From NCBI GenBank assembly GCA_964035545.1, contig OZ037773.1, positions 62,001-126,000 on the forward strand: a stretch of 64,000 bases of DNA. Reading direction: 5' to 3'. Below, in pieces: positions 14,364 to 59,238 of the stretch. The stretch's first letter is position 1, and the number at the start of each line of letters is the position of its first letter. This stretch comes from Bugula neritina (lineage: Eukaryota > Animalia > Bryozoa). Under the pieces are notes generated by a model. The model was given only the letters and a program-made list of their open reading frames with translations, searched no databases and was not told the DNA's origin. The position numbers were made by a program, and so were the translations under genes.

Positions 14364-14545
14364 GTGTGTATGGAAGGAGTGCATAGAGAGTGTGTATGGA
14401 AGGAGTGGATAGAGAGTGTGTATGGAAGGGGTGGATAGAGAGTGTGTATGGAAGGGGTGGATAGAGTATATAGAAGGAGTGGATAGAGAGAGCATGAGAG
14501 GAGTGGATAGAAAGTGTGTGTAAGGGGAGAGTGTATGGTAGAATA
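14364..14545. repeat. ~26-bp minisatellite (TGTGTATGGAAGGRGTGGATAGAGAG)n
   Basis: Direct tandem units that decay to the right. Confidence 0.85.
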
Positions 14546-15179: not shown

Positions 15180-15548
15180 AGACAAACAGACTAACAGAGA
15201 AACTAGTGAACAGACAGACTATCAGAGAAACTAGCGAACAGACAGACTATCAGAGAAACTGGTGAACAGACAGACTATCAGAGAAACTAGTGAACAGACA
15301 GACTAGCAGAAGAACTAGTGAACAGACAGACTATCAGAGAAACTAGTGAACAGACAGACTAGCAGAGAAACTAGTAAACAAACAGACTATCAGAGAAACT
15401 GGTGAACAGACAGACTAGCAGAGAAACTAGTGAACAAACAGACTATCAGAGAAACTAGTGAACAGACAGACTATCAGAGAAACTGGTGAACAGACAGACT
15501 ATCAGAGAAAGTAGTGAACAAACAGACTAGCAGGGGAACTAGTGAATG
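15180..15548. repeat. 28-bp minisatellite (CAGAGAAACTAGTGAACAGACAGACTAT), about 13 units
   Basis: Head-to-tail units with no spacers. Confidence 0.93.
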
Positions 15549-21253: not shown

Positions 21254-23281
<2,028 letters not shown>

Positions 23282-24167
23282 GATGAAACTTGTATTGCAA
23301 GCGCGCTACTATGCTACTCGCTGTAAGTTCAGTCTGCAACGAACATCCGGGCTGCCAAAGCGTAAAGCCACAGCCAATGGGCGAGGGCGTGCTGCTATCT
23401 AATTATTGAATTGACTACTAGCAGTCGTTGCGTAGGCGGGAATCAAACGATGCGATAACTTAGTTGAATGAAACGTTATGCTAAACGCAACACTGAATGC
23501 CTGATCAACTATTAGGTATTCATCACACATTGGTAATTTTACTACTGGAATTAATTATTGTAAGTGCTAACTTGACAGTTGGTGACTATGTTTAGTTGTC
23601 GATTGGTGTGTTGCAGTAGTGTAGTAGTAGTACGTAGAAACTGTCATAAAAAACGTCAACGTATACACATTTATCACTACTTTAAATTTGAATAAGAGTT
23701 GAAATGTTGTTCATCAAATTCAATTTTGAGGACAAACGGTATTTTGATTTAAATTCAATGATAATACTAAATCTAATTGATTTTCATTTTTTTCGAATTT
23801 GATATTTAAATTTCAATCATCATCATATTTAAGTTTATATTTATATTTATTATCCATTATGATTATCATTATGATTGTCATTATGATCATCATTTGAATA
23901 GTAATGAATCATGATATAAATAACATTAACTGATTACATTTACTGATCAAACAGCAAATGTTGTAAATGTAACAAGTACAACTACAAGTGCTAACCCTGG
24001 TCTAATAGTAATATAAGTTTTCACTAGAGGCTTCCCTCTCTATAGGTATAGGCATTTTAGTTGCTGCGGAAGTGCTACGTCAACTGAGATAATAATAAAC
24101 TGTAGCAATGCTGTTATGATTTTTGTTATCATTATGATTAACTAAGTGATTATCATTAATGACCATG

Positions 24168-24473
24168 TGTTATGTTTTTCAGTTTTAGGGTTGATATGCT
24201 ATCCAGAGAGTCTATTTATCTAGTATAGAACTGCACCAGGCTAAGTCGAGTGAACGAGTATATTTTATACACAACTATACATTATAAAAACACGATACAT
24301 TATTTCTAACAAGTTACACATCTAATCTATTTCACACTCTAGCTTCGACTGAGTTAGCAGCGGGAAACTACAATTGCTGCTAACTATCAACTACGCTAAT
24401 TGGCTATCCATTGTTCCGGGTCAATTACGCGACCCCACATGTTGTGCTGCTGGTAGTTCCACGAACCACCACA
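24168..24473 (-). repeat. 3' LTR of C
   Basis: TG...CA; identical to 31364-31669. Confidence 0.97.
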
Positions 24474-24487
24474 CCGCCCCCACCAGC
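24474..24487 (-). promoter_or_regulatory. Polypurine tract of C
   Basis: GCTGGTGGGGGCGG abutting the 3' LTR; the same sequence is in B2. Confidence 0.8.
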
Positions 24488-24759
24488 AGAAAGCCATCTT
24501 TCTGATATATATAAAAAAAACATTCAATAGTAATTGTATACATCAGTGGACAAAAAAAATACATAATATACAGGAAGAGACATAATAATAGACAGAGTCA
24601 TGGTAGCGATCCGTTGCATACAATTGGCCAGCTGTAGATAGACGAGGAATACTAGCTAGCTGTGGTAGTAGACAAGGATTAACCTGTCTAGCAGTTAAGC
24701 ATTTGCACGAGTTTGGTTCCTCACCAAATGTGGAGTTGCGGAGTATTCTGGGTAGCATA

Positions 24760-25547
24760 CTAGAGTCCTTGTTGGGCACGCCGGTGCTTGGCTTGGCATG
24801 TACGCAGTTTCCGTTTCATACGGCATACGGATCCCTTCAGCTGGAAGAGTCCTGTGGTAGTGTTAAGTAGATCTGGTGCCAGCTGGGTGAACTCTTCTTG
24901 TAGTCGTAGGAGGCGTTCTTCTACTGTAGCTAGTCGTACTGGGTCTGGGGACGGTGTCCGTCTGCGGCGTAAGGGTGGACTGGGGGACCTGGTCCGTCTC
25001 TTCGCCGGGGTAGGGGAGATCTCTCCTTCTTCTGGATATGTAGTTTCCTCGGGGGTGTATGTAATTGGAGGGCGGTCAGACACCAACGGAGATTGTTGTC
25101 GGGCGTTGTCTAACACACGTTGGAACCCCGAGGATAGAACTGCTAATAGCATGGCCTTCTTTACCAGAGGTCGTATATATGTGAGGAACTCCGGGTACAG
25201 CTTAGCGTCGACCACATAGTTTTCTCCAGGGAAACAGCCCGCCGCTCTGTGTCTGGTGACGGGGTAGGGATACACATCATTGTACCCGCAGGGGCAGAAG
25301 GTCAGTAGGAGATGAGCATTGACGTGTAGTTTAAGGGAGCGGTGGGAGGCGCAATCTTCACCACAGATCTGGCATCTCGTCCGTCCTCTGGACCCCCAGG
25401 CTGTTTCTATTTCTTCTTCGGTTTGTGGAGACACCCACCGCCAACGGCGGCGTAGTGGCTCAGGCCGGTCACCACTAGCATAGTCCTCCGGATACGGAGC
25501 GGGAAGTGTTCTATCCCGTACCCTGGTTGTAGCGGGTCGAGTGTAAT
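24760..25547 (-). CDS. ORF3 exon 2: C2H2 and C2HC zinc fingers, RS/SP basic tract, coiled coil (spliced product about 270 aa)
   Basis: CQIC-x12-H-x3-H and CPC-x12-H-x4-C; preceded by TACTAAC (25573-25567) and a TTTTTCAG acceptor (25548); no upstream in-frame ATG of its own. Confidence 0.88.
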
Positions 25548-25811
25548 CTGAAAAAGTTTCAACAGTGTTAGTACAGTACACTGCTGTGTTGTCAGCTTGA
25601 ACAGCTTGGCAACTCCTAATTCAGTTACCTCGTAGAGATTAATGATAGTGAATAGTCAGATAGAACCGTATTGCAATGAGATTATAAAAATCTCTAAGTC
25701 AAACTGAGTTCTTACTACGGTATTTCACTAACCTATCTCCAGCTCGATTGACTCAGTGAGTCAGAGCTGAGCGATGCAATCTAGTTTCGTATTAAGATAT
25801 AGTTAACTCAC

Positions 25812-25836
25812 CCCACGATCTGTTGTCGTAAGACAT
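25812..25836 (-). CDS. ORF3 exon 1 (micro-exon MSYDNRSW + G)
   Basis: ATG TCT TAC GAC AAC AGA TCG TGG G|GTGAGT; phase 1 matches exon 2; homologous micro-exons in B2, D and A2. Confidence 0.8.
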
Positions 25837-26089
25837 ACTGAATATGTGAAATGGTTTGAACTACTGCTTAGAAACACGTCTACTCTTGACTACATCAGCG
25901 TATGAAAAGATCGAGCAACGTGGTTGGGGTGCGTGATTAAGACTTTGTGCACCCGGCGGATGAATTTTGTTTCTACTTCCGTCGATACAAAAGTTGATAT
26001 TTCCGTGGTGTTGACAACTCCCACATTTGCTCGATTCTTTTCTCGTACGGTTTTCCCCTAGACTTTCATGTGTGCCGCTTTTAACGCAG

Positions 26090-29000
26090 TCACATACGAA
26101 GTCCTTCAAGTATGCGGGGGGTTGCCTCGTACGCTGTCCCCTTTCTAGGGGGGGGTGACACGCTTGCCGGTTCGTTAGTAGGGGCCTCTAATGGCGTCTC
26201 TACTTCACCGTCAGCAGTCACCTCTTCTTGTTCTCCGGATGCAGCCCCTCCCTCCGTGGGGTTTTGCACTTCCGGAACCGGCTCGGTTTCTGGAAGTGAT
26301 GGAATCAGACTTGGCGGTGGCGGACACGCTTCTGTTGGCAGAAGCTGCCGCTCCTCTCTCACCAAGTTTTCTTCCCGCGGTATGACCACTTCGTATTCAG
26401 GTCCATGCCGCCGTCGCCCGCGCGTTGTTGTCTGCCTTCTGGGCTCTAACAACGGGGGGGCTTCTCCCACCCCGCCGGGGCTAGCCCAATACGGTTTCAA
26501 GCGAGACTCATTCTGGATAGACACCTGTCCTGAGCGCTCAATCTTGTACGTATGATTGGGCATAGCCTCGACGACCACGTAGGGGCCTACGAACTTAGGC
26601 TTCAGCTTATCAGCCTGTCCGCGGCGCCTACGGTAATTGACCATCCACACCTTATCTCCTCTTTGATAGAGGGGTGGTTCATCGGAATCTTCGTGCCGCA
26701 CCTTCCACTGCTGTTGACGCAGTATCTCGTGTGCGGCCTTCATCCGTTCCACTAGTTCACTGGCATACTCGTGGATTGAGTTATCCTGCTCTGGAACGTG
26801 ATAGGTGAGATGGTCAGGGACACGAGTCTCTCTCCCGAGCATCAAGAGGTTTGGGGTCTCACCAGTACTGGTGTGTGGGGTGCTACGGTATGCACGCATG
26901 ACTTGCGGCAACACCGTATCCCATTCCTCTTGACCTCGTCCAAGGAGGAGACTCCGGAGTGCATCACCTAGCATCCGGTTGTTGCGCTCCACCACCCCGT
27001 TACCTTGGGGGTGGTAGGGGGTGGTCCTGCTCTGATTTACTCCCCAGAGGTGGCAAAGGTCGCTCATCAGTTGAGACTGGAATTGAGCGCCTTGATCAGA
27101 GTGTATCTGTTCGGGAAGCCCAAAATAACAGAATACATGTTGGTCTAGTGCCCTGGCCACTGTTGGGGCTGATGCATCTGGGATAGCCAGAGCATCCGCC
27201 CACCTAGTAAAGTGGTCGGTTAGTACTAGGATCCAATTATTGCCTCTGGGGGTCAGGGGCATGGGTCCGACCAGGTCTACAGCGACTACTTGCCAGGGCC
27301 TGCCAGCATATAGCCTCCGCCGTCCTGCTTCACCAGGGGGGCGGCTATGCTTACTGGCCTGGCAGATCTCACACTGTTTGACTCTGAGCCGGACGTCACG
27401 CTCCATCTGCGGCCAATACCACCGGAGTCGTAATTTGGATATCACTCGCTTGACCCCTGCGTGGGCCTGCTTGTGAGTATCCCAAATCAACTCACGGCGG
27501 ATGGCTGTGGGGCAGACTACCCTCTTCCTTTCCGGGTGTCTGCCGCTGGCAGCTAGAGAGATGGTTAGCAAACCATCCTGCCCGATCCGCAGCGAGTCCC
27601 AACGCTGACAGTATAGCCGGAACTCGGCGCATCCCTGTCTTATGCGTTCCTCGCTGGGTCGTCGCCCTTCCCGTTTGGCCCGGTATATGTCTGCCACGAC
27701 TCCAGGCAGTTCTTCTTGGAGCTTCTTCAGCTCTCGAACATTACCGGCCAGTACAGGGTTGGCGCGGAGGTTTTGCACATCCTCCGGGGACTCATCAACT
27801 CTCTGCCTGAGTTGACCTTGATCCCAGTCAAACGGTGCTCCGTGATGAGCCAGCGTCTCCAACTCGCATCGTGGGGGACCTCCATCCCTCCTCTCGATGT
27901 TGAGACACTGTTTGCAACCTCCGTCAGGTCGGCGACTCAACCCATCCGCATTGCTGTGTCTCTTGCCCGGTCGATGTTCGATCCGGTACGAGAATTCAGC
28001 TAGGATTTCGAGCCACCGGGCGACCTGACTAGAGGGCTCTGCTCTCCTGCACAACCAGATCAGCGAGGCATGATCCGTACGCAGCCGGAACTTCCTGCCA
28101 TATAGGTATGGTCTGAAGTGCTTCACTGACTTGATTACTGCCAGCAGTTCCTTGCGGGTAGTGCAGTAATTTCGTTCAGCGGGAGAGAGAGACTTGCTGT
28201 AGTAGGCTACTACTACTTCTCGGCCTTCCTGCACTTGTGACAGCACAGCGCCAACATTCTGGTCACTGGCGTCCGTGTCTAGGATGTACTCCAGAGTGGG
28301 GTCTGGGTAGGCCAAGATGGGCGCCGTTAGGAGGCAGCCCTTGAGGCGGTCGAACGCTTCTTGTTCGACTGGGGTCCACTGCCACGTCACTCCCTTTGCG
28401 GTAAGCCGGTTTAAAGGCTGGGCTATGCCCGCAAAGTCTGGTATGTATTGCCTGTAATACCCTACCAGCCCCAAGAAAGCCCGGAGTCCGGTCAAGTCTT
28501 GGGGGGTGACCCAGTCTTCTACTGCCCGTACCTTTTCGGGATCCGTTGCCACGCCGTTTCGACCGACAACGTGCCCCAGGTACTTGACCTCCGGCTGCAA
28601 CAGAGCGCACTTGGAAGGTTTGAGCTTAAGACCGGCACGTCGGAGTCTCTCGAAAACCTCCTGCAGACGACTGACATGTGTCTCGAAGTCTGGAGAGATT
28701 ACGATGACATCATCGAGGTAGACCAGCAGTGTCTTCCAATGGAGTCCGCTAAGGACTTGTTCCATCAGCCTCTGGAAGGTGGCTGGGGCGGAGGTTAACC
28801 CGAAGGGCAGCACCTTCCACTTCCACAAACCGTCCCGTGTGATAAACGCCGCTTTCTCTTGGGCGTCGGGACTCAGAGGAACCTGCCAATAGCCGCTTAG
28901 CAAGTCTAACGTACTGAAGTACTTGCTGCCGGCTAGGGCGTCCAATGACTCGTCAATACGAGGTAGAGGGTAGGCGTCCTGTATGGTTACGCTATTGAGT

Positions 29001-30490
29001 TTGCGGTAGTCCACACAGAACCGCCAACTGCCGTCTTTCTTCCGGACCAGTACGACTGGCGAGCTCCACGCACTATGGGCGGGCTCTATCAGTCCCCGGT
29101 CCAGAAGATCCCGTACTTGTCGGCTAACCTCCTTCTCTTTCTCCGGCCCCAGCCTGCGTGTGGGCTGCCGGACAGGGACTGTCCCTGCAGTCAGCGGTAT
29201 TTCGTGTCTGACAATTCCAGTCAGTCCCACGTCATGCTCTCCGCTGCTGAACACATCACCGTAGTCGCGTAGTAACTTGGCCATAGCCTGGCGCTCTCTG
29301 TTACTCGCGCAGCCGCCACTGGCTGTTTCGTATAACTCCCGGAGATGTGTTGGGACTGCCCCTCGTCCCTGAATAGGGTGTCGAGAGAGTGCCTCCGTCG
29401 CATCACCCAGCGACGGGCCTACGTCTCCCTCCTGAACAGAGTGAAAACGGCCCAGCATCGACCCAGCCGGGAGCTTGATAGGCTCGGTAAAGGGGTTGAC
29501 GCACTGCACTAAGATCTCCCCTTGTTCAGTCAGCTGATTCAGACTGCTGGCAAGTTGGATCTTTTCGTGCGCGCCTTCAACCACCCCGAGTCCAGAGATC
29601 CGGCTACTATTCACCCTGCAGTGAATGGTAGCCCGGGAGCGGCCTGGTATGGTACGGTTGCGTACCACTTGCACACCTCCCACTAAAGGGCAGCCGAACT
29701 TGTCGACGCAGGCGAGTTCCCGCCCGGACATCATCATTGCAGATCTGCTAAAATCTATGTGACATCCGTGCCGTTTAAGGAACGGCATCCCGAGGATAGC
29801 ATCCTCCTTGAGCTGACTGACGATGAACGTCTCTTGGATCGTTTGATCGCGGACTCGTCCCGTCAGCTCAATTATACCATAGAAGGGAAGGCATGACCCG
29901 TCAGCTAGGGTGCCGTACTCCCCTTCGTATGCTTCCATCTCGCCCCTGACCCTAGCACTGAGGGTGTCGAAGAGTTGGCGGCTTAAGAGGTTTGTGGTAC
30001 AGCCCGAATCAATGAGAAAAGTAACAGCTTTGCCTTCCAGTTTACCGGGCAAGAAATAGCTGTTCCCATGGGGCTGCACCTGAACTCTCCCTTCAGGCCT
30101 TACTCTCGCAGGGAGTACCTCCCTCGCTTTGGGTCGCGAAGGAGGTCTCTTGGGGCGGTGATAGGTAGGCCTCGGGGGTGCCGAGGCTAGATTCTCAGCT
30201 ACCTTTGCGTGCTCCCATCCAGATTCTTGGACTTGTAGCCCTGTGAATCTGTTGTGAAGGGGCATAGAAAAGGCAGCCGCGGGGCGAAGCCCCTTGCTGG
30301 TCCGTCGTGGCTGTTGCCACTGTTGGTTGCCAGTACGCGGTACCCGTCTGGGTGACCTGCGTTTCTTCTTCCCTAGAGGTTTCGTCGGCCCGCGGAAGGT
30401 GGGAACATCTGCGGGCCGCGGTAGTTTAACCCCTGATTTAGGAAGGGACAATATCGGCGGAAATGTCCTTGATTTCCGCACTCCCAGCAA
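26090..30490 (-). CDS. pol: Pol polyprotein (PR-RT-RNase H-INT), expressed by -1 frameshift from gag
   Basis: LIDSG protease, YLDD RT, TDAS RNase H, HHCC integrase zinc finger, DDE core, KFVGPY (GPY/F) module, Pro/Glu-rich tail. Confidence 0.97.
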   Translation of the reverse strand: MLGVRKSRTFPPILSLPKSGVKLPRPADVPTFRGPTKPLGKKKRRSPRRVPRTGNQQWQQPRRTSKGLRPAAAFSMPLHNRFTGLQVQESGWEHAKVAENLASAPPRPTYHRPKRPPSRPKAREVLPARVRPEGRVQVQPHGNSYFLPGKLEGKAVTFLIDSGCTTNLLSRQLFDTLSARVRGEMEAYEGEYGTLADGSCLPFYGIIELTGRVRDQTIQETFIVSQLKEDAILGMPFLKRHGCHIDFSRSAMMMSGRELACVDKFGCPLVGGVQVVRNRTIPGRSRATIHCRVNSSRISGLGVVEGAHEKIQLASSLNQLTEQGEILVQCVNPFTEPIKLPAGSMLGRFHSVQEGDVGPSLGDATEALSRHPIQGRGAVPTHLRELYETASGGCASNRERQAMAKLLRDYGDVFSSGEHDVGLTGIVRHEIPLTAGTVPVRQPTRRLGPEKEKEVSRQVRDLLDRGLIEPAHSAWSSPVVLVRKKDGSWRFCVDYRKLNSVTIQDAYPLPRIDESLDALAGSKYFSTLDLLSGYWQVPLSPDAQEKAAFITRDGLWKWKVLPFGLTSAPATFQRLMEQVLSGLHWKTLLVYLDDVIVISPDFETHVSRLQEVFERLRRAGLKLKPSKCALLQPEVKYLGHVVGRNGVATDPEKVRAVEDWVTPQDLTGLRAFLGLVGYYRQYIPDFAGIAQPLNRLTAKGVTWQWTPVEQEAFDRLKGCLLTAPILAYPDPTLEYILDTDASDQNVGAVLSQVQEGREVVVAYYSKSLSPAERNYCTTRKELLAVIKSVKHFRPYLYGRKFRLRTDHASLIWLCRRAEPSSQVARWLEILAEFSYRIEHRPGKRHSNADGLSRRPDGGCKQCLNIERRDGGPPRCELETLAHHGAPFDWDQGQLRQRVDESPEDVQNLRANPVLAGNVRELKKLQEELPGVVADIYRAKREGRRPSEERIRQGCAEFRLYCQRWDSLRIGQDGLLTISLAASGRHPERKRVVCPTAIRRELIWDTHKQAHAGVKRVISKLRLRWYWPQMERDVRLRVKQCEICQASKHSRPPGEAGRRRLYAGRPWQVVAVDLVGPMPLTPRGNNWILVLTDHFTRWADALAIPDASAPTVARALDQHVFCYFGLPEQIHSDQGAQFQSQLMSDLCHLWGVNQSRTTPYHPQGNGVVERNNRMLGDALRSLLLGRGQEEWDTVLPQVMRAYRSTPHTSTGETPNLLMLGRETRVPDHLTYHVPEQDNSIHEYASELVERMKAAHEILRQQQWKVRHEDSDEPPLYQRGDKVWMVNYRRRRGQADKLKPKFVGPYVVVEAMPNHTYKIERSGQVSIQNESRLKPYWASPGGVGEAPPLLEPRRQTTTRGRRRHGPEYEVVIPREENLVREERQLLPTEACPPPPSLIPSLPETEPVPEVQNPTEGGAASGEQEEVTADGEVETPLEAPTNEPASVSPPPRKGTAYEATPRILEGLRM
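30369..30430 (-). promoter_or_regulatory. -1 ribosomal frameshift signal: G_UUA_AAC plus H-type pseudoknot
   Basis: Heptamer 30430-30424; 5-nt spacer; stem CGGCCCGC/GCGGGCCG; loop TTCCC pairs with downstream GGGAA; pol is in the -1 frame. Confidence 0.82.
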
Positions 30491-31332
30491 AAACTGACTG
30501 TTTCTCCCTGTGGCGGCGCCGATGGCCGCATGGGCTCAGGGGCGGTACTCACTGGGTTTTGTGGTGTCAGTGTTGCTATCAGCTTGGCTAGCATGTCCGT
30601 CAGTTGAGTGACTTTTGATGCCGTCGCCAACTGGGACACGGCAGCCGCGGCGGGGGTTTCCTCCCCTTGTCCCGCGGCCGTGTCTGCGCGGTCTATCTCC
30701 ACTTGGCGGGAGCTTCCGCGACTTTTATGCATTTGGTTAGCTAGGAGGTAAGCTTCCCCCTCAGTCAGAGCATCTTCAACGGTGGTGACTCCCCTAGCTA
30801 GAAACTGGTGGTGGAGACCCAGATCGTCGACAGATGCTATGAAAGCGTCGAGGGTGTACCTCTCGCGGTTGACTGGGGGCAAGTCGCTGTACGCGATCTG
30901 TGCCAGCTTCATGACCGCGGCGGCATGCTCCCGCAGCGGGGTGCGGGGATCACGCCGCAACCTCTGCAATCGGGACCTGGCATCTGTAGCAGAGAGGCCA
31001 AAGCGGGCCCGCAGAGAAGCAAAGATATTATCAATGTCTACGCCCAGCCCATAGGGCTTGGCTTTGTCCATCAATGCCATTCTAAGCTTCAACAGGGCCA
31101 CCCTAGGGGGCCACTGAGCGACGTCCATTACGTCGCTAAACTCTTGGATAAATTGTTCCACCTCCTCTTCACCCGTGAAGGTGGGCGCCTTTAACCTGTA
31201 GCGGTCTTCAGCTAGTTCTCGCGGAACCCTTCGCTCTTCTACTACATGGTTAACAGGCATTGTCTCTACAGCATTGTCTCTACGCTCACCTTCGATTGCC
31301 GGTGGTTGAGTTCCAGCATTTTCAGTCTCCAT
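30373..31332 (-). CDS. gag: Gag (319 aa) with a C-terminal CCHC zinc knuckle
   Basis: ATG 12 nt after the PBS; CWECGNQGHFRRYC. Confidence 0.96.
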   Translation of the reverse strand: METENAGTQPPAIEGERRDNAVETMPVNHVVEERRVPRELAEDRYRLKAPTFTGEEEVEQFIQEFSDVMDVAQWPPRVALLKLRMALMDKAKPYGLGVDIDNIFASLRARFGLSATDARSRLQRLRRDPRTPLREHAAAVMKLAQIAYSDLPPVNRERYTLDAFIASVDDLGLHHQFLARGVTTVEDALTEGEAYLLANQMHKSRGSSRQVEIDRADTAAGQGEETPAAAAVSQLATASKVTQLTDMLAKLIATLTPQNPVSTAPEPMRPSAPPQGETVSFCWECGNQGHFRRYCPFLNQGLNYRGPQMFPPSAGRRNL

Positions 31333-31344
31333 CTTGGATGCACT

Positions 31345-31362
31345 ATCCCACCGCTGCCACCA
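31345..31362 (-). promoter_or_regulatory. Primer-binding site (tRNA-Leu)
   Basis: TGGTGGCAGCGGTGGGAT, an 18-nt complement of the metazoan tRNA-Leu(AAG/TAG) 3' end. Confidence 0.93.
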
Positions 31363-31363
31363 C

Positions 31364-31669
31364 TGTTATGTTTTTCAGTTTTAGGGTTGATATGCTATCC
31401 AGAGAGTCTATTTATCTAGTATAGAACTGCACCAGGCTAAGTCGAGTGAACGAGTATATTTTATACACAACTATACATTATAAAAACACGATACATTATT
31501 TCTAACAAGTTACACATCTAATCTATTTCACACTCTAGCTTCGACTGAGTTAGCAGCGGGAAACTACAATTGCTGCTAACTATCAACTACGCTAATTGGC
31601 TATCCATTGTTCCGGGTCAATTACGCGACCCCACATGTTGTGCTGCTGGTAGTTCCACGAACCACCACA
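31364..31669 (-). repeat. 5' LTR of C
   Basis: Identical to the 3' LTR; followed by the PBS. Confidence 0.97.
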
Positions 31670-31683
31670 CATGATTGAGATAT

Positions 31684-31998
31684 TGTTATAATTTCCACAA
31701 TTATAATAAGTATGGGGATTCGTGTATACTATAGTTATCCACGTTGCATTGCCAAACACCAGACGAGTAATTAAGAGAGAAGAAGATTTATTTCCCACAC
31801 TAAGTACACAAGTAAAAGTAGTATAGTTTTAGTAGCACACATATATAAAACATTTATCCTAGTACACTCAGCATCACGCTTTAACTGAATTGTATTATGA
31901 AACTGTCCGGAAGCCTTTCTGCTTCACCGGGGGTAATCACGTACTTAGTGGGGATTGGCTAGTGAGCACGTGGCGCTTACGCTTCACTGGCCACTACA
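31684..31998 (-). repeat. 3' LTR of A2 (Y-type)
   Basis: Minus strand TGTAGTGGCCAGTGAAGCG...TATAACA preceded by PPT GCTGGAGGAGGCGG; homologous to the B 5' LTR. Confidence 0.85.
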
Positions 31999-32303
31999 CC
32001 GCCTCCTCCAGCAGGGAGCCTACTTCCTGCTAAAAAAATGAGTGGGAGGGAAGCGTAAAAAAAAAACATGAATATATATATATATATAAAAAAATACGAT
32101 ACCGGAATAAAAATGTACATAAGAAAAAATACTAAGATACGTGTATCTTAGTGTTTTTTCTTGTGTGTACACAATTAATATCTTTCTAATCCTATTTACA
32201 AAATACAGTTTTCACAGCCCCGGTGGAGCACCAGGATGGAGGGAGACGGAGGAAATATATCCGGAGACGAAGGTGGTGTAGGGAGAGGGGAAAGAGTGTC
32301 ACA

Positions 32304-32794
32304 CTAATCCTTAGTGGCACGTTTCAGCCGATTTATAGACTCCTGGAGGGACTTCAACTCGCTGCTTTTACTCTGAGAGCCAACAGATGCACTTCCCTCT
32401 CGAGCTCGTTGGTCCTTACTTCGACTTCCCGCAGGTTACGGGCCAGTGGAGAGGAACGGGAGGGGAACTGATGAGGTCGATGTCTCCGGATCTTTACAAC
32501 ATAATTCTAGTGACAATCGACTGTTACTAGTCTGAGAGTCACAACTTTTATAAGGCACTCCAGAGACCAGTTGATTACGTGTAGACTGACCAAGAATGAC
32601 AGTGTCTAGCTCGAGATCTAACAGATCGTCGGCCATTACTGCGTCCTCATCGTCATTCACGTTAAACGTGGTCCCCAGTAACTCTGATTCAATCCGACTG
32701 ATTAGTTCAGAATTAACTGGCATCGGGCCTGTTTCCATAGATAGTAACACAAGACTTATACAGGCTTACCTGTGAACTTGGTATTGATCGACAT
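32304..32794 (-). pseudogene. Short ORF3 variant of A2 (micro-exon 32794-32770; coiled-coil exon from ~32491, frameshifted)
   Basis: ATG TCG ATC AAT ACC AAG TTC ACA G|GTAAGC; downstream RNLREVEVRTNELEREVHLLA...ELKSLQESINRLKRATKD* aligns to the ORF3 C-terminus. Confidence 0.6.
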
Positions 32795-53800: not shown

Positions 53801-56353
53801 CAAGGGTTGCCTACTGACGGCACCCATCACGGCCTACCCAGACCCTACTCTGGAGTACATCCTCAACACAGACGTCAGTGACCAGAATGTTGGCGCTGTG
53901 CTGTCTCAAGTGCAGGAAGGCCGAGAAGTAGTAGTAGCCTACTACAGCAAGTCTCGCTCACCCACTGAACGAAATTACTGCACTACCGGCAAGGAGTTGC
54001 TGGCAGTAATCAAGTCAGTGAAGCACTTCCGACCATACCTGTACGGCAGGAAGTTCTGGCTGCGTACGGATCATGCCTCTCTGATCTGGTTGTGGAAGAG
54101 AGCAGAACCGTCCAGTCAGATCGCCCGGTGGCTCGAAATCCTGGCTGAGTTCTCCTACCGGATCGAACATCGACCGGGCAGGAGACACAGCAATGCGGAT
54201 GGTTTGAGCCGCCGACCTGATGGAGGTTGCAAACAGTGTTTCAACAATGGGAGGAGGGACGGAGGTGCCCCGCGATGTGAACTAGAGACGCTGGCTCACC
54301 CCGGAGCACAGTTTGACTGGGACCAGGGTCAACTCACACAGAAGGTTGACGAGTCCCGGGAGGTTGTACAAAACCTCCGCGCCAACCCTTTTTTTGCCAA
54401 TAATGTCCGGGAGCTGAAGAAGCTTCAGGAAGAGCTGCCTGGAGTAGTGGCAGACATATATCGGGCCAAAAAGGAAAAGCGACGACCCAGCTAAGAACAA
54501 CTACGGCAGGGATGCGCCGAATTCCAGCTGTTCTGCTAGCGTTGGGACTCGCTGAGGATCGGGCAGGAAGGTCTGCTGACCATTTCTCTAGCTGCTAGCG
54601 GCAGACACCCAGAGAGGAAGAGGGTGGTCTGCCCCAGCGCCATACGTCGTGAGTTAATTTGGGACACTCACAAACAGGCTCACGCAGGAGTCAAGAGAGC
54701 GATCTCCTAATTAAAACTCCGGTGGTACTGGCCCAAGATGGGGCGCGATGTCCGACTCAGAGTAAAACAGTGTGAATTCTGCCAGGCCAGCAAGCATGGC
54801 CGTCTCCCTGGCGAAGCGGGACGGCAGAGGTTATATGCTGGAAGGCCGTGGCAAGTAGTAGCTGTCGACCTGGTCAGACCCTTGCCCCTAACCCCCAGAG
54901 GCAATAGTTGGATCTTTGTTTTGACCGACCACTTTACGAGGTGGGCGGACGCTCTGGCCATCCCAGATGCGTAAGCCCCGCAGTGGCCAGGGCGCTAGAC
55001 CAACATGTATTCTGTTACTTCGGGCTCCCCGAACAGATACACTCTGATCAGGGTGCTCAGTTCCAGTCTCAAATGATGAGCGACCTCTGCCGCCTCTGGG
55101 GAGTAAATCAGAGCAGGACCACCCCTTACCATCCTCAAGGTAACGAAGTGGTGGAGCGCAATAACCGGATGCCAGGTGATGCGCTCCGGAGTTTATTCCT
55201 CGGACGCAGTCAGGAGGAGTGGGACACGGTATTGCCGCAAGTCATGCGGGCATACCGTAGCACCCCGCACGCCAGTACTGGTGAAACCCCAAACCTCCTA
55301 ATGCTCGGGAGAAAGACTCGACTCTCTGACCATCTCACCTACCACGTTCCAGAGCAAGACAGCTTGGTCCACGAGTATGCCAGCGAACTTGTGGAACGGA
55401 TGACGGTCGCACACGAAATGCTGCGGGAAAAACAGTGGCAGGTGCGGCGCGAGGATTCCGAGGAACCACCCCTCTATCAGACAGGAGATTGGGTTTGGAT
55501 GGTCAATTACCGTAGGCGTCGCGGACAGGCGGCTAAGCTACAGCTCAAGTTCGTGGGACCCTACGTCATAGTCGAGGCTATGCCCAACCATACCTACAAG
55601 ATCGAGAGCTCAGGACAGGTGTCTATCCAAAATGAGGCTCGCTTGGAGCCGTATTGGGCTAGCCCAGATGCAGTGGGAGAAGCCCCGCCCCTTCTGTTGT
55701 TAGAGCCCAGTAGGCAGACGACAATGCGTGGGCGACCGCGGCATGGACCTGAATATGAAGTGGTCATTCCGCGGGAAGAAGACTTGGTACAAGACGAGCG
55801 ACCACTTTTGCCTACAAAAGTGCGTCCGCCGCCTCCTACACCAAGTCTGATTCCATCACTTCCGGAAACCGAGCCGGTTCCGGAAGTGCAAATCCCCACG
55901 GAGGGAGGGGCTCCATCCGGAGAACAGGAAGAAGTAACCACTACCGGTGAAGTAGAGGCGCCGCCAGAGGCCCCTGCTAGTCCACCAGTGAGTGCGCCAC
56001 CTTCCCTGGAGCGGGGACAACGTACAAGGCAACCCCCATCATATTTCAAAGACTTCGTATGTGACTGCATTAAAAGCGGCGCGTATGAAAGTCTAGAGGG
56101 GAACCGTACGGGGAAAGTATCGAGCAATTGTGGGAGTTGTCAACACCACGGAAATATCAACTTTTGTATCGGCGGAGTTGAGAATAAAATCATCCGCCGG
56201 GGGTGCAAAGTCCTAGTCACGCGCTCCAACCACGTTGCTCGATCTTTTCTTATGCTGATGCAGTCAAGAGCAGACGTGTTCCTAGTCAATACTAGTTCAA
56301 ACCATTTCACAAATTCAGTATGTCATACGATACCGGATCGTGGGGTGAGTTAA
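50885..56353 (+). pseudogene. gag-pol pseudogene of B2
   Basis: Fragments as in B1 plus integrase core, GPY/F and tail ORF 54908-56353. Confidence 0.92.
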
Positions 56354-57363
56354 CTATGTCTTGATATGGAAACTAGATTGCATCACTCAGCTTCGACTCG
56401 CCTGAGTCAATTGAGTTGGAGATAGGTTAGTGAACTACAGTGGTAGGAACTCAGTTTGACTTAGAGATTTCACAATCTCACTCCAATATGTGTTCTGTTC
56501 CAACTACTCACTGCCGTAAATCTCTACGAGTATTAACTGAACGAGCAGTTGCCAGGCTGTCCAAGCCGACAACACTACAGTGTAATGTACTAACACTGTT
56601 GAAACTCTTTCAGGTTACACTCGACCCGCTGTACCCAGAGTACGGGATAGAGCACCTCTCGCTCCGCACCTCAAGGAGTACGCCAATGGCAGACGACCTG
56701 AGCCACTGCGCCGCCGCTGGCGGTGGGTGTCGCCGGAGACGGAGAGGCAGATAGAAGCAGCCTGGGGACCGCAAGGAAGGACACAGTGTCCGATCTGTTA
56801 CGAAGAGTGCCCGTCTCACCGCTCATTGAAGCTACATGTCAACGCACACCTCCTACTAACCTTCTGTCCCTGCAGATAAAATGATGTCTACCCCTATCCC
56901 GTCACCCGACATCGAGCAGCTGGCTGTTTCCCCGGAGAGAACTCTGTGGTCGACGCTAAGCTTTACCCGGAATTTCTGACTCTAATACGGCCCTTAGTGA
57001 AGAAAGCAACATTACTGGCCGTCCTAACCTCCGGCTTCCAGCATGTATTAGACTATGCCAGGCAACAATCTCCATTGGTGTCTGACTGCCCTCAAATTAC
57101 TTATACCCCAGAAGAGTTCACATCCCAAAAAGAAGAAGAAGAAGCTTCACCCCCCCCCTCGTAGAAAACAAACCGTATTTCCGGACCCAGCTTGCCTGGC
57201 CACTGTAGAGGAGCGTCTCTTTCAGCTGCAGGCCGAGTTTACCCAGTTAGCTCCAGACCTACTCAGTACTTCAACGGGACTTTACCAACTGAAGGGCTCG
57301 GTAGGCCGGATTAAAAGAAAGCTACGTGCCCGTCAAGCTAAGCACAGGCTTACCAAACACTGA
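56320..57363 (+). pseudogene. ORF3 pseudogene of B2 (micro-exon 56320-56344, intron 56345-56613, exon 2 from 56614)
   Basis: MSYDTGSW G|GTGAGT...TACTAAC...CTTTCAG|; CPICYEECPSHRSLKLHVNAH; premature TAA at 56877 and a later frameshift. Confidence 0.85.
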
Positions 57364-57648
57364 CTCTGATTTTTCTGCCCGGAATGACCCGTAAGCCCCA
57401 CCTTCTTGGAAGTCCAAGACTATCATGTAAATGCTTGACAGCTCAACCTCCTTGTCCAACACCACAGCTAGCGGTATCCTCTCTCTACAGCTAGCCAATT
57501 GTATGTGACATGCTGTTATAATGATTATGTCTGTCATTGTTGTATCTATATATATGTTAATGCCTTTTTCTTTTGGTCTACTGGTGTTATGTGTGTTAAC
57601 AGTAAAATATTTTGTATCAGAAAGAGGGCTTTCTGCTGGTGGGGGCGG

Positions 57649-58183: not shown

Positions 58184-58258
<75 letters not shown>
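58184..58258. repeat. (CA)n(TA)n microsatellite at the truncation point of D
   Basis: Direct reading. Confidence 0.9.
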
Positions 58259-58260
<2 letters not shown>

Positions 58261-59238
58261 TAGCGACCCTTTGAAATCCCGCTGAGCCCTTCAATTCACT
58301 AAGGCCCATTGTAGTACTGAGTAAGTCGGGGGCCAATTGAGTAAATTTATCCTGCAGTCGTAGGAGTCTTTCCTCGACGGTTGTTAGTCGGTTAGGCCTG
58401 GTCGGAGTTGGCGTCGCTTCTTCTGGAGAATCTGATGCTTCCATGGAGGTGTTGTCTGGCCAGGGTATGATTGCAGCGACCGTTTTTACCATAGGGGATT
58501 ATTGACGGGCGGCTGTTAGCAGTGTATAAAATCCGGAGGATAATGCCCAGGTCAAAGCCTTCTTAACCACTGGTCTGACGGCTTCTAGATACTGGTCGTA
58601 ATTGTCCGCGTCCACTACATAGCCTTCGCCTGCAAAACAGTCCATCATATGTGCCACGGCGGGGTATGGGTATACGTCGTGAAATTTGCACAGACAGAAG
58701 CGTAGTAGGAACTGTGCATTCACATGAAGCCGTAGTCCTTGGTGTGAGGGAAGCTCCTCATAACACACGTGGCAGGTTCGTTGTGAGCCACTTGGTCCCC
58801 AGGCTTCTTCAATTTGTCGCTCCGTCCGTCGTGACACCCATTTATGTCTTCGACGCAGTGCCACGGGCAGTCCGTTGTCTGTTTCCGGTCCGTTATCCAA
58901 GGAGGAGAGGGGGTAGATCTTGTGACCCGGAGTTGGTCGATCGAGTGTGATCTGCAAGAGTATAGCAGTGTAAAGAGGGTACACTGAGTACAGCCGGCGT
59001 ATACAGCCTGGCGAGTACTTAACTCAATTTGACACTCGTGAGGCTCAGTTAATGAATAGTTGATCGAGAACACACACCGCTACGACAGACTGTTCAGTCT
59101 TAAAGTCAATGTGAGTTCTCACCCCTAAAAATCATTATCGAGTCTCCAGCTTATTCTGTTACTGTTAAGCTGATTAATACAGTTTAGTTCTCGTACCAAA
59201 AACATAACTAACTCACCTCTCGATTCTTGGCAAGCCAT
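58259..59238 (-). pseudogene. ORF3 pseudogene of D (micro-exon 59238-59217, intron 59216-58952)
   Basis: MACQESR G|GTGAGT...CTCTTGCAG|AT; CHVCYEELPSHQGLRLHVNAQ...CLCKF; RLTTVEERLLRLQ coiled coil; frameshifts. Confidence 0.82.

What the first reader, a model, noticed from the sequence alone, without database searches (positions are those of the whole stretch)
24760..25836. Gypsy lineage carries a spliced, intron-containing third gene (not env) between pol and the 3' LTR
Seen: the ORF at 24760-25581 has no usable ATG, but is preceded by TACTAAC...TTTTTCAG|AT. 264 nt upstream lies ATG TCT TAC GAC AAC AGA TCG TGG G|GTGAGT, which splices in frame (G+AT = Asp) to give about 270 aa. The same arrangement recurs in B2 (MSYDTGSW, 269-nt intron, TACTAAC, synonymous changes TCT/TCA and GAC/GAT), D (MACQESR, 265 nt) and A2 (MSINTKFT, GTAAGC, about 278 nt), always in phase 1. 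Established: elements that copy through RNA lose constitutively spliced introns, and the env of errantiviruses has a signal peptide and TM helix, which are absent here. Inference: this is a selected accessory gene with regulated splicing, giving a complex-retrovirus-like design I do not recognise from described Gypsy families.
Basis: partly seen in the sequence, partly recalled or inferred. Interest (0 to 1): 0.92.

Follow-up and report, generated by a model that had tools for sequence, protein, structure and literature searches.

The report
Spliced accessory gene in bryozoan Gypsy
A young, intact Gypsy retrotransposon, most likely from the bryozoan Bugula neritina, carries a selected third gene for a zinc-finger/coiled-coil protein that can only be translated after splicing. 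A strongly conserved folded RNA sits just before its splice acceptor, so the layout resembles a retrovirus with a regulatory gene rather than one with an envelope gene.

Summary
Element B (24168-31669, minus strand) has identical LTRs, intact gag and pol, and a third ORF. That ORF's first in-frame Met lies after its conserved domain.

An ATG mini-exon (25835-25812), a GT donor, a 264-nt gap and a phase-1 acceptor (exon from 25547) recur in 13 copies from the window and related contigs. Mini-exon lengths are 22, 25 and 31 nt.

ORF3 is under purifying selection (dN/dS about 0.1-0.3). It has no transmembrane segment, so it is not env.

- **Donor in gag:** every ORF3-bearing copy has a conserved phase-1 donor about 14 codons into gag. 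One genomic contig (L010) joins that donor exactly to the ORF3 acceptor. So the acceptor serves a classical subgenomic splice. Use of the local mini-exon remains inferred.
- **Constrained "intron":** the 264 nt are about as constrained as ORF3's amino-acid-changing sites. They fold into a structure with 15 compensated base pairs and have no Rfam match.

Spliced ORF3 messages, non-env ORF3s and the Cer1 CERV protein are published precedents. I rate this a new variant of a known kind. No RNA data were available.

The parts
24168..31669 (-). Element B: full-length Gypsy-type LTR retrotransposon, flanked by a 4-bp target duplication (31673-31670 and 24167-24164)
   Evidence: Self-BLAST shows 100% identical LTRs. 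The ends and the duplication were read. gag, pol and ORF3 have no breaks.
31364..31669 (-). 5' LTR (306 nt)
31346..31362 (-). Primer-binding site, near-identical in all lineages
   Evidence: Pattern search over the window and loci.
30373..31332 (-). gag ORF (319 aa)
   Evidence: No Pfam hit. The position and the overlap with pol fit gag.
31288..31332 (-). gag ATG plus 14 codons plus one base (exon ends at 31290), then a GT donor at 31289-31288; phase 1
   Evidence: Conserved in every ORF3-bearing copy, with 10 or 14 codons. Absent from relative L014, which lacks ORF3. Joined to the ORF3 acceptor in L010.
26090..30490 (-). pol ORF (protease, RT, RNase H, integrase), overlapping gag in another frame
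   Evidence: Pfam; ORF list.
25836..26089 (-). Conserved non-coding spacer between the pol stop and the mini-exon ATG. It is conserved in sequence with little predicted structure. It is a candidate internal promoter or protein-binding region.
   Evidence: Alignments; sliding identity 0.57-0.65 between lineages.
25812..25835 (-). Mini-exon: ATG plus 7 further codons plus one base; phase-1 donor follows
   Evidence: ATG and A at -3 are invariant; lengths are 22, 25 and 31 nt.
25548..25811 (-). 264-nt stretch bounded by GT and AG. It is the local intron and also the last part of the large gag-to-ORF3 intron. It forms a conserved structured RNA.
   Evidence: RNAalifold gives 57 pairs, 15 of them compensated. 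MFE z-score is -2.68. Divergence is 0.11-0.44, against ORF3 pS of 0.62-0.83. No Rfam match.
24760..25547 (-). Main ORF3 exon (261 codons plus stop): two zinc-finger-like motifs, two helices, a disordered Pro/Ser/Arg-rich linker, and a long C-terminal helix with a basic tail
24474..24505 (-). Purine-rich tract just upstream of the 3' LTR (bounds approximate)
   Evidence: Read; similar tracts occur in relatives.
24168..24473 (-). 3' LTR (306 nt)
56320..57370 (+). Copy B2: mini-exon, 269-nt intron and ORF3. The gene is broken (1 frame change, 2 stops). The end bound is approximate.
58220..59238 (-). Copy D: mini-exon (22 nt), 265-nt intron and ORF3. The gene is broken (1 stop). The low bound is approximate.
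32300..32794 (-). Copy A2: mini-exon with a GTAAGC donor, a candidate acceptor 278 nt on, and only short reading frames that recall the C-terminal coiled coil. No ORF3 match at E<=1e-3.

Best explanation
ORF3 is a selected accessory gene of one Gypsy lineage in the bryozoan host. It encodes a basic protein with zinc-finger and coiled-coil features and no membrane segment. I infer from these features that it binds nucleic acid.

ORF3 has no start codon of its own and is read only from spliced RNA. All routes use one phase-1 acceptor (AG at 25549-25548).

- **Route 1 (supported by a natural product):** the LTR-driven transcript is spliced from a phase-1 donor 14 codons into gag (31290/31289) to that acceptor. 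This removes gag-pol. The protein starts with 14 Gag residues, as in a retroviral subgenomic mRNA.
- **Route 2 (inferred from conservation only):** a local ATG mini-exon (25835-25812) is spliced over the last 264 nt to the same acceptor. How ribosomes reach that ATG is unknown. It could be an internal promoter in the conserved spacer or a second splice into the spacer.

The 264 nt in front of the acceptor form a conserved folded RNA. It is present only in RNA that has not been spliced at this acceptor. Its helices enclose the branch-point region and pair the local donor with the tract before the acceptor.

I infer that it is a cis element of the unspliced genomic RNA. It would limit splicing and/or mark that RNA for export or packaging. 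ORF3 protein may be its partner.
For: **Gene and selection**
- 72 relatives, down to 47% identity.
- pN is 0.12-0.41 against pS 0.56-0.84. dN/dS is 0.10-0.31 wherever dS is not saturated.

**No own start**
- The first in-frame Met lies after the conserved domain.

**Route 1**
- The donor lies in gag after 10 or 14 codons plus one base in every ORF3-bearing lineage.
- It is absent from the nearest pol relative without ORF3, L014.
- L010 joins the primer-binding site, gag leader and donor exon exactly to the ORF3 exon. The result is an open 261-aa frame.

**Route 2**
- The ATG and A at -3 are invariant across 13 copies.
- Lengths of 22, 25 and 31 nt all leave one extra base, and a GT donor follows.

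**RNA element**
- 57 pairs, 15 of them compensated, with 95.9% of cells paired.
- Slid controls give 30-45% paired and 2-4 compensated pairs. None of 500 shuffles reaches 15.
- Many G-U pairs fit the sense strand only.
- MFE z-score is -2.68.
- Divergence equals ORF3 pN and is 2-5 times below pS.

**Protein**
- C-x2-C-x12-H-x3-H spacing followed by a Cys/His cluster. Net charge is +15. Maximum hydropathy is 1.24.
- In the AlphaFold2 model, residues 40-88 are confident and a long helix spans 208-260.
Against: - No transcript evidence of any kind was available.
- Route 1 rests on one contig from a short-read assembly.
- The upstream LTR-like sequence of that contig differs from its downstream LTR. 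It is therefore a recombinant or partly mis-assembled outside the junction.
- A search for a second such fusion found none.
- No copy or protein shows the mini-exon fused to ORF3.
- The structure was predicted from the same 12 related sequences on which the pairs were counted. These represent only about six lineages.
- The protein model is of moderate quality (mean pLDDT 63). Nothing links the protein to the RNA.
Confidence: 0.7

Rival explanations
1. ORF3 would be a self-contained two-exon gene with its own promoter in the spacer. Only the 264-nt intron would be removed, and the gag donor would play no part.
For: - The ATG, A at -3, the frame and the GT donor are conserved in 13 copies.
- A block conserved in sequence but not in structure lies just upstream, as a promoter would.
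Against: - The gag donor is conserved in step with ORF3 and is absent where ORF3 is absent.
- The only spliced product seen uses the gag donor.
- No mini-exon fusion was found among about 190 family proteins.
Confidence: 0.15
2. The mini-exon is never translated. Its GT motif would be a decoy donor or simply one arm of the folded RNA. It would hold spliceosome parts unproductively near the acceptor so that most RNA stays unspliced. ORF3 would then be made by route 1 only.
For: - The donor motif pairs with the tract before the acceptor in the consensus fold.
- The whole 264 nt is constrained.
- No mini-exon fusion product was seen.
Against: - A decoy needs neither an invariant ATG nor A at -3.
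- It also needs no open frame whose three length classes all keep phase 1.
Confidence: 0.25
3. The L010 junction is not a splice product. It would be a chance genomic deletion or an assembly artefact, so the gag donor would be only a coding feature of Gag.
For: - There is a single contig, and its two LTR-like ends do not match.
- Two bases at the junction are ambiguous between the two sides.
Against: - Both ends fall exactly on a GT and an AG that are conserved across lineages, and the frame is kept.
- The two sides share no long word that could mislead an assembler.
- The donor stays fixed while the Gag peptide around it varies in sequence and length.
Confidence: 0.05
4. ORF3 is an envelope-type gene, or a decayed remnant of one.
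For: It sits between pol and the 3' LTR, and it is expressed by a subgenomic splice as errantivirus env is (PMC4276936).
Against: - There is no hydrophobic segment.
- There are no env or fusion-protein hits in Pfam, PDB sequences, or Foldseek against PDB or BFVD.
- The protein is basic, with zinc-finger spacing.
Confidence: 0.02
5. ORF3 is a passenger: a captured piece of a host zinc-finger gene with no role for the element.
For: The N-terminal domain has relatives in RefSeq gene models of another bryozoan, Watersipora subatra.
Against: - Purifying selection acts across element lineages whose synonymous sites are saturated.
- Splice signals and the RNA element are conserved together with ORF3.
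Confidence: 0.03

Closest known systems
Errantivirus (insect Gypsy) env expression, and the retroviral subgenomic env mRNA in general
   Same: A third ORF lies between pol and the 3' LTR. It is read from a spliced subgenomic RNA that lacks gag-pol (PMC4276936). Here the donor lies a few codons into gag, so the product begins with Gag residues. From my own knowledge, unchecked here, avian leukosis-type retroviruses do the same.
   Different: The product is not a glycoprotein: it has no signal peptide, no membrane anchor and no fusion-protein homology. An extra ATG mini-exon and a conserved folded RNA precede the acceptor.
CERV of the C. elegans Gypsy-type element Cer1 (PMC10309623)
   Same: Both are accessory proteins of an LTR retrotransposon made from spliced RNA, with an N-terminus shared with Gag. 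Both have a putative leucine zipper, a basic nuclear-type motif and a Cys-rich putative zinc finger. CERV is needed for export of the unspliced genomic RNA, which is the role I consider possible here.
   Different: CERV is 517 aa from five exons that overlap gag, and it has a G-protein-like domain. ORF3 here is about 270 aa and lies after pol. No sequence relation was seen, but CERV itself was not compared. No function has been shown here.
Non-env ORF3s of bdelloid rotifer LTR retrotransposons (PMC5408684)
   Same: These are lineage-specific third ORFs of non-envelope type, including a coiled-coil class. The paper says such ORF3s are typically expressed from spliced messages.
   Different: The protein families differ (GDSL lipase, DEDDy exonuclease and others). 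No zinc-finger type, mini-exon or conserved RNA element is described there.
Rev/RRE and constitutive transport elements of retroviruses (as summarised in PMC10309623)
   Same: A structured RNA lies in a region that splicing removes. It therefore marks unspliced RNA, and a small basic accessory protein comes from the spliced RNA.
   Different: The likeness is in layout only. Binding, export signal and dependence are all untested, and there is no sequence or Rfam relation.

Membership tests
Ty3/Gypsy (Metaviridae) LTR retrotransposon | Two LTRs, target-site duplication, primer-binding site next to the 5' LTR, purine tract before the 3' LTR | tested here: met
Ty3/Gypsy (Metaviridae) LTR retrotransposon | pol domain order: protease, RT, RNase H, integrase | tested here: met
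   Pfam positions along the 1466-aa ORF.
Errantivirus-type element (env-bearing Gypsy) | ORF3 is an envelope glycoprotein with a signal peptide, a membrane anchor and fusion-protein homology | tested here: not met
   Maximum hydropathy is 1.24. No family or fold hits.
Errantivirus-type element (env-bearing Gypsy) | ORF3 is read from a spliced subgenomic RNA lacking gag-pol | tested here: inconclusive
   The donor and acceptor are conserved, and one genomic copy carries the exact junction. No RNA data.
Rev/RRE-like or CERV-like export module | Accessory protein translated from spliced RNA of the element | tested here: inconclusive
   Same evidence as above.
Rev/RRE-like or CERV-like export module | Structured RNA present only in unspliced RNA | tested here: met
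   The covarying fold at 25548-25811 lies inside both candidate introns.
Rev/RRE-like or CERV-like export module | The protein binds that RNA and is needed for export of unspliced RNA | not testable with these tools
   No binding, localisation or expression data.
Rev/RRE-like or CERV-like export module | Sequence or fold homology to Rev, Rex, Rec or CERV | tested here: not met
   No such named hit in PDB sequences, or in Foldseek against PDB or BFVD. The profile search gave hits from the Bugula samples, ENA and Logan, and among the ten I looked up, Watersipora RefSeq models. CERV itself was not fetched or compared.
Classical C2H2 zinc finger | C-x2-4-C-x12-H-x3-5-H spacing and a beta-beta-alpha fold | tested here: inconclusive
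   The spacing is present at C58, C61, H74 and H78. The model has confident short strands and a helix there. Pfam and Foldseek hits to C2H2 fingers fall below threshold.
Any Rfam RNA family | Covariance-model match | tested here: not met
   No match at E<=1 in 24100-31700 on either strand.
Spliceosomal GT-AG intron (the local 264 nt) | GT donor, branch-point-like motif 18-40 nt before a pyrimidine tract and AG, and phase kept with the flanking exons | tested here: met
   Met in nine of 13 copies; each of the other four carries one disabling change.
Spliceosomal GT-AG intron (the local 264 nt) | Removal seen in RNA or in a processed copy | tested here: not met
   No fused product among the family proteins. 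The one RNA- or DNA-derived Logan contig I read keeps the stretch. No RNA-seq was available.

The most novel reading that the evidence does not exclude
The zinc-finger/coiled-coil ORF3 protein and the 264-nt folded RNA form a matched pair. The protein, made only from spliced RNA, would bind the element that only unspliced RNA keeps. It would then drive export or packaging of the genomic RNA. That would be an independently evolved Rev/RRE-like or CERV-like circuit in a lophotrochozoan Gypsy element. The mini-exon would give a second, separately regulated way to make the protein.
Probability: 0.22. Interest if true: 0.85.

Novelty: new variant of a known kind. Interest (0 to 1): 0.6.

Why it matters
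All retroelements that splice face the same problem. They must keep some RNA unspliced, export it and package it, while also making spliced messages. How LTR retrotransposons outside the retroviruses solve this is known in detail for very few cases, Cer1 being one.

This lineage offers a compact natural example with many diverged copies. It has two conserved donors that share one acceptor in the same phase. It has a selected accessory protein of a new family. It also has a constrained, covarying RNA placed exactly where it can tell unspliced RNA from spliced RNA.

That makes the question testable with ordinary expression and structure data from a marine invertebrate. It also adds an undescribed RNA motif and an undescribed protein domain, shared with gene models of another bryozoan.

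Tried and rejected
- **Metagenome scan:** a scan of JGI metagenome contigs with the ORF3 alignment found pattern matches but no relatives. That collection seems not to hold the Bugula samples, so I used contig look-ups instead.
- **RNA and protein libraries:**
  - Rfam gave nothing.
  - Pfam on ORF3 and on 40 relatives gave only sub-threshold coiled-coil and zinc-finger hits.
  - PDB sequences gave nothing significant.
  - Foldseek against PDB and BFVD gave nothing below E=1.
- **Second fusion:** a search for another gag-ORF3 fusion, using the N-terminus of the natural fusion protein P0024, returned only P0024 itself.
- **Spacer fold:** a consensus fold of the spacer 25872-26028 is weak (-6.3 kcal/mol, 2 compensated pairs). 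I do not claim structure there.
- **In-frame cassette exon:** I considered the mini-exon as an in-frame cassette between the gag donor and the ORF3 acceptor and rejected it. The sequence upstream of the ATG varies in length by non-multiples of three, and in B it holds an in-frame stop.
- **Doubly spliced mRNA:** a conserved pyrimidine tract followed by CAG lies in the conserved block that ends 40-50 nt upstream of the mini-exon ATG. It could be an acceptor for a doubly spliced mRNA. Its branch-point-like motif is too close to the AG, and nothing supports it, so I leave it open.
- **Promoter tool:** the promoter/terminator scan is built for bacteria and was not used.
- **tRNA:** no tRNA gene in the window matches the primer-binding site.
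- **Other ORFs:** the 82-codon ORF across the pol end and spacer is not kept in relatives that have single-base indels there.

Full report
**1. Observation**

- The minus-strand ORF at 24760-25581 translates to a 273-codon frame. Its first Met comes only after the conserved Cys/His domain.
- Upstream lie an ATG at 25835, eight codons plus one base ending at 25812, and GTGAGT from 25811. TACTAAC is at 25573-25567, followed by a pyrimidine tract and AG at 25549-25548. The exon resumes at 25547 in frame. The gap is 264 nt.
- B2 (269 nt), D (265 nt) and A2 (GTAAGC donor, candidate acceptor 278 nt on) match his account, all in phase 1.

**2. The element and its host**

Element B spans 24168-31669 on the minus strand.
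- It has 306-nt LTRs that are 100% identical, a 4-bp target duplication, a primer-binding site and a purine tract.
- It has a 319-codon gag. It also has a 1466-codon pol with the domain order protease, RT, RNase H, integrase.
- gag, pol and ORF3 have no breaks. It is therefore a recent insertion.

The other copies in the window are decayed. The counts below come from tblastn against B's proteins and are lower bounds.

| Copy | gag | pol | ORF3 |
|---|---|---|---|
| A2 | 1 frame change, 1 stop | 5 frame changes, 9 stops | no detectable ORF3 |
| B2 | 1 stop | 3 frame changes, 7 stops | 1 frame change, 2 stops |
| D | none seen | 2 frame changes, 3 stops | 1 stop |

- The elements are 51-57% GC and lie in DNA of about 31% GC.
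- Nearly all ORF3 relatives come from two JGI samples. Their contig names carry the prefix AY690838, the accession of the Bugula neritina mitochondrial genome. A protein identical to the window's own ORF3 frame is held in JGI/IMG.
- The host is therefore most probably that bryozoan, an animal.

**3. The gene is real and selected**

- The main exon, searched by reference, finds 72 unnamed relatives down to 47% identity.
- On nine copies with a long open frame, pN is 0.12-0.41 and pS is 0.56-0.84. dN/dS is 0.10-0.31 wherever dS can be estimated.
- A profile search with no length limit gives 125 hits. The distant hits share only the N-terminal domain and reach 596 aa.
- Among the ten hits I looked up are two RefSeq models of another bryozoan, Watersipora subatra. 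One of them, compared by hhalign, gives probability 98.6% and E 1e-15.

**4. Splicing**

*The donor in gag.*
- Every ORF3-bearing copy has a near-identical primer-binding site (at most one base differs) and then the gag ATG.
- After 10 or 14 codons plus one base comes a GT donor in phase 1. It stays fixed while the Gag peptide around it varies. In B the exon ends at 31290.
- L014 comes from an ENA sample. It is the nearest pol relative (72% identity) and has the same primer-binding site. It has no ORF3, no spacer and no such donor.

*The natural junction.*
- Contig L010 carries the primer-binding site, gag ATG, 14 codons and the extra base. These are joined directly to the first base of the ORF3 exon. 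ORF3, the purine tract and an LTR follow.
- The gene caller read it as one open 261-aa protein, P0024.
- Both ends fall exactly on the conserved GT and AG. I read this as a reverse-transcribed copy of the spliced subgenomic RNA.
- Caveats: it is a single short-read contig. Its upstream LTR-like sequence differs from its downstream LTR. No second case was found.

*The local mini-exon.*
- It is supported by comparison only. In 13 copies the ATG and A at -3 are invariant.
- The lengths of 22, 25 and 31 nt all keep phase 1, and GT follows.
- Four of the 13 copies carry one disabling change each, in the mini-exon or in one of its two splice signals.
- No protein or copy shows the mini-exon fused to ORF3.

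**5. The 264 nt are not a plain intron**

- Between lineages they diverge by 0.11-0.44. This equals ORF3's pN and is 2-5 times less than its pS. The spacer upstream is similarly conserved.
- RNAalifold on 12 copies predicts 57 pairs, 15 of them with compensatory changes on both sides.
- In my controls, 95.9% of cells are paired. Slid partners give 30-45% paired and 2-4 compensated pairs. None of 500 shuffles reaches 15.
- Frequent G-U pairs fit the sense strand only. The sequence of B folds better than 199 of 200 shuffles.
- One hairpin holds the branch-point motif. An outer helix pairs the local donor with the tract before the acceptor.
- Rfam has no match.
- Limit: the structure was derived from the same few, related sequences on which it was tested.

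**6. The protein**

- It has classical C2H2 spacing followed by a Cys/His cluster, then two helices and a disordered Pro/Ser/Arg-rich linker. It ends in a helix of about 50 residues with a basic tail.
- Net charge is +15 and there is no hydrophobic segment.
- No significant family, sequence or fold match was found.

**7. Mechanism**

- Shown or nearly shown: the gene is selected, it needs a start codon supplied by splicing, and the acceptor has been used with the gag donor.
- Inferred: the mini-exon gives a second start, and the folded RNA is a cis element of unspliced RNA.
- That element could control splicing, export or packaging. The 5' leader before gag is under 50 nt in the copies read (about 13-50 nt) and leaves little room for such signals.
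- The protein may act on that RNA.

**8. Comparison with what is known**

- Errantivirus env is made from a spliced subgenomic RNA (PMC4276936).
- Rotifer LTR elements carry diverse non-env ORF3s, which that paper says are typically expressed from spliced messages (PMC5408684).
- Cer1 makes the spliced protein CERV. It shares its N-terminus with Gag, has a zipper and a Cys loop, and is needed for export of genomic RNA (PMC10309623).
- The present case is a new protein family, a new RNA element and a two-donor layout within that known kind.
Noticed in passing
window 1-20753 and 34197-54958: About 20.7 kb is present twice at close to 100% identity. It includes partial Gypsy copies and the tandem arrays. 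At least one base differs between the two copies. This is either a segmental duplication or an assembly artefact.
   Followed up: partly
window 15182-15546 and 14364-14519 (again about 34.2 kb further on); 22097-22851: There are tandem arrays with a 28-nt unit (13 copies) and a 26-nt unit (6 copies), and a (TA)n tract of about 750 nt in a 20% GC stretch.
   Followed up: no
window 31670-31690: Element B is inserted about 10 nt beyond the 3' LTR end of copy A2, in the same orientation. The window is a cluster of copies from one family.
   Followed up: partly
L014:858-7382 (ENA ERZ27264286): This related Gypsy element (pol 72% identical) has the same primer-binding site. Its pol is followed at once by a purine tract and LTR. 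It has no ORF3, no spacer and no donor in gag.
   Followed up: yes
proteins P0009, P0011, P0013, P0014, P0017 and others: A sub-lineage of at least 12 protein clusters has an in-frame ATG two codons before the acceptor. It lies inside the pyrimidine tract and could allow translation without splicing in that lineage.
   Followed up: no
window 24940-25010 (ORF3 residues about 180-205): The B/L006 lineage carries an Arg/Ser/Pro-rich insert that the other lineages lack. It recalls RS-type or nuclear-localisation segments.
   Followed up: no
P0212, P0260 (Watersipora subatra XP_067940964.1, XP_067944745.1): RefSeq gene models of another bryozoan contain the N-terminal zinc-finger domain of ORF3. 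Whether these are host genes or element-derived is unknown.
   Followed up: partly
L010:400-836 versus L010:1938-2282: The LTR-like sequence upstream of the spliced copy has CAAT-like and TATA-like motifs. It is unrelated to the downstream LTR, which resembles that of copy D. This points to a recombinant element or an assembly switch at the shared primer-binding site.
   Followed up: partly
window 25861-26109 (minus strand): An 82-codon ORF with a TTG start spans the pol end and the spacer. Relatives have single-base indels there, so it is probably chance.
   Followed up: partly
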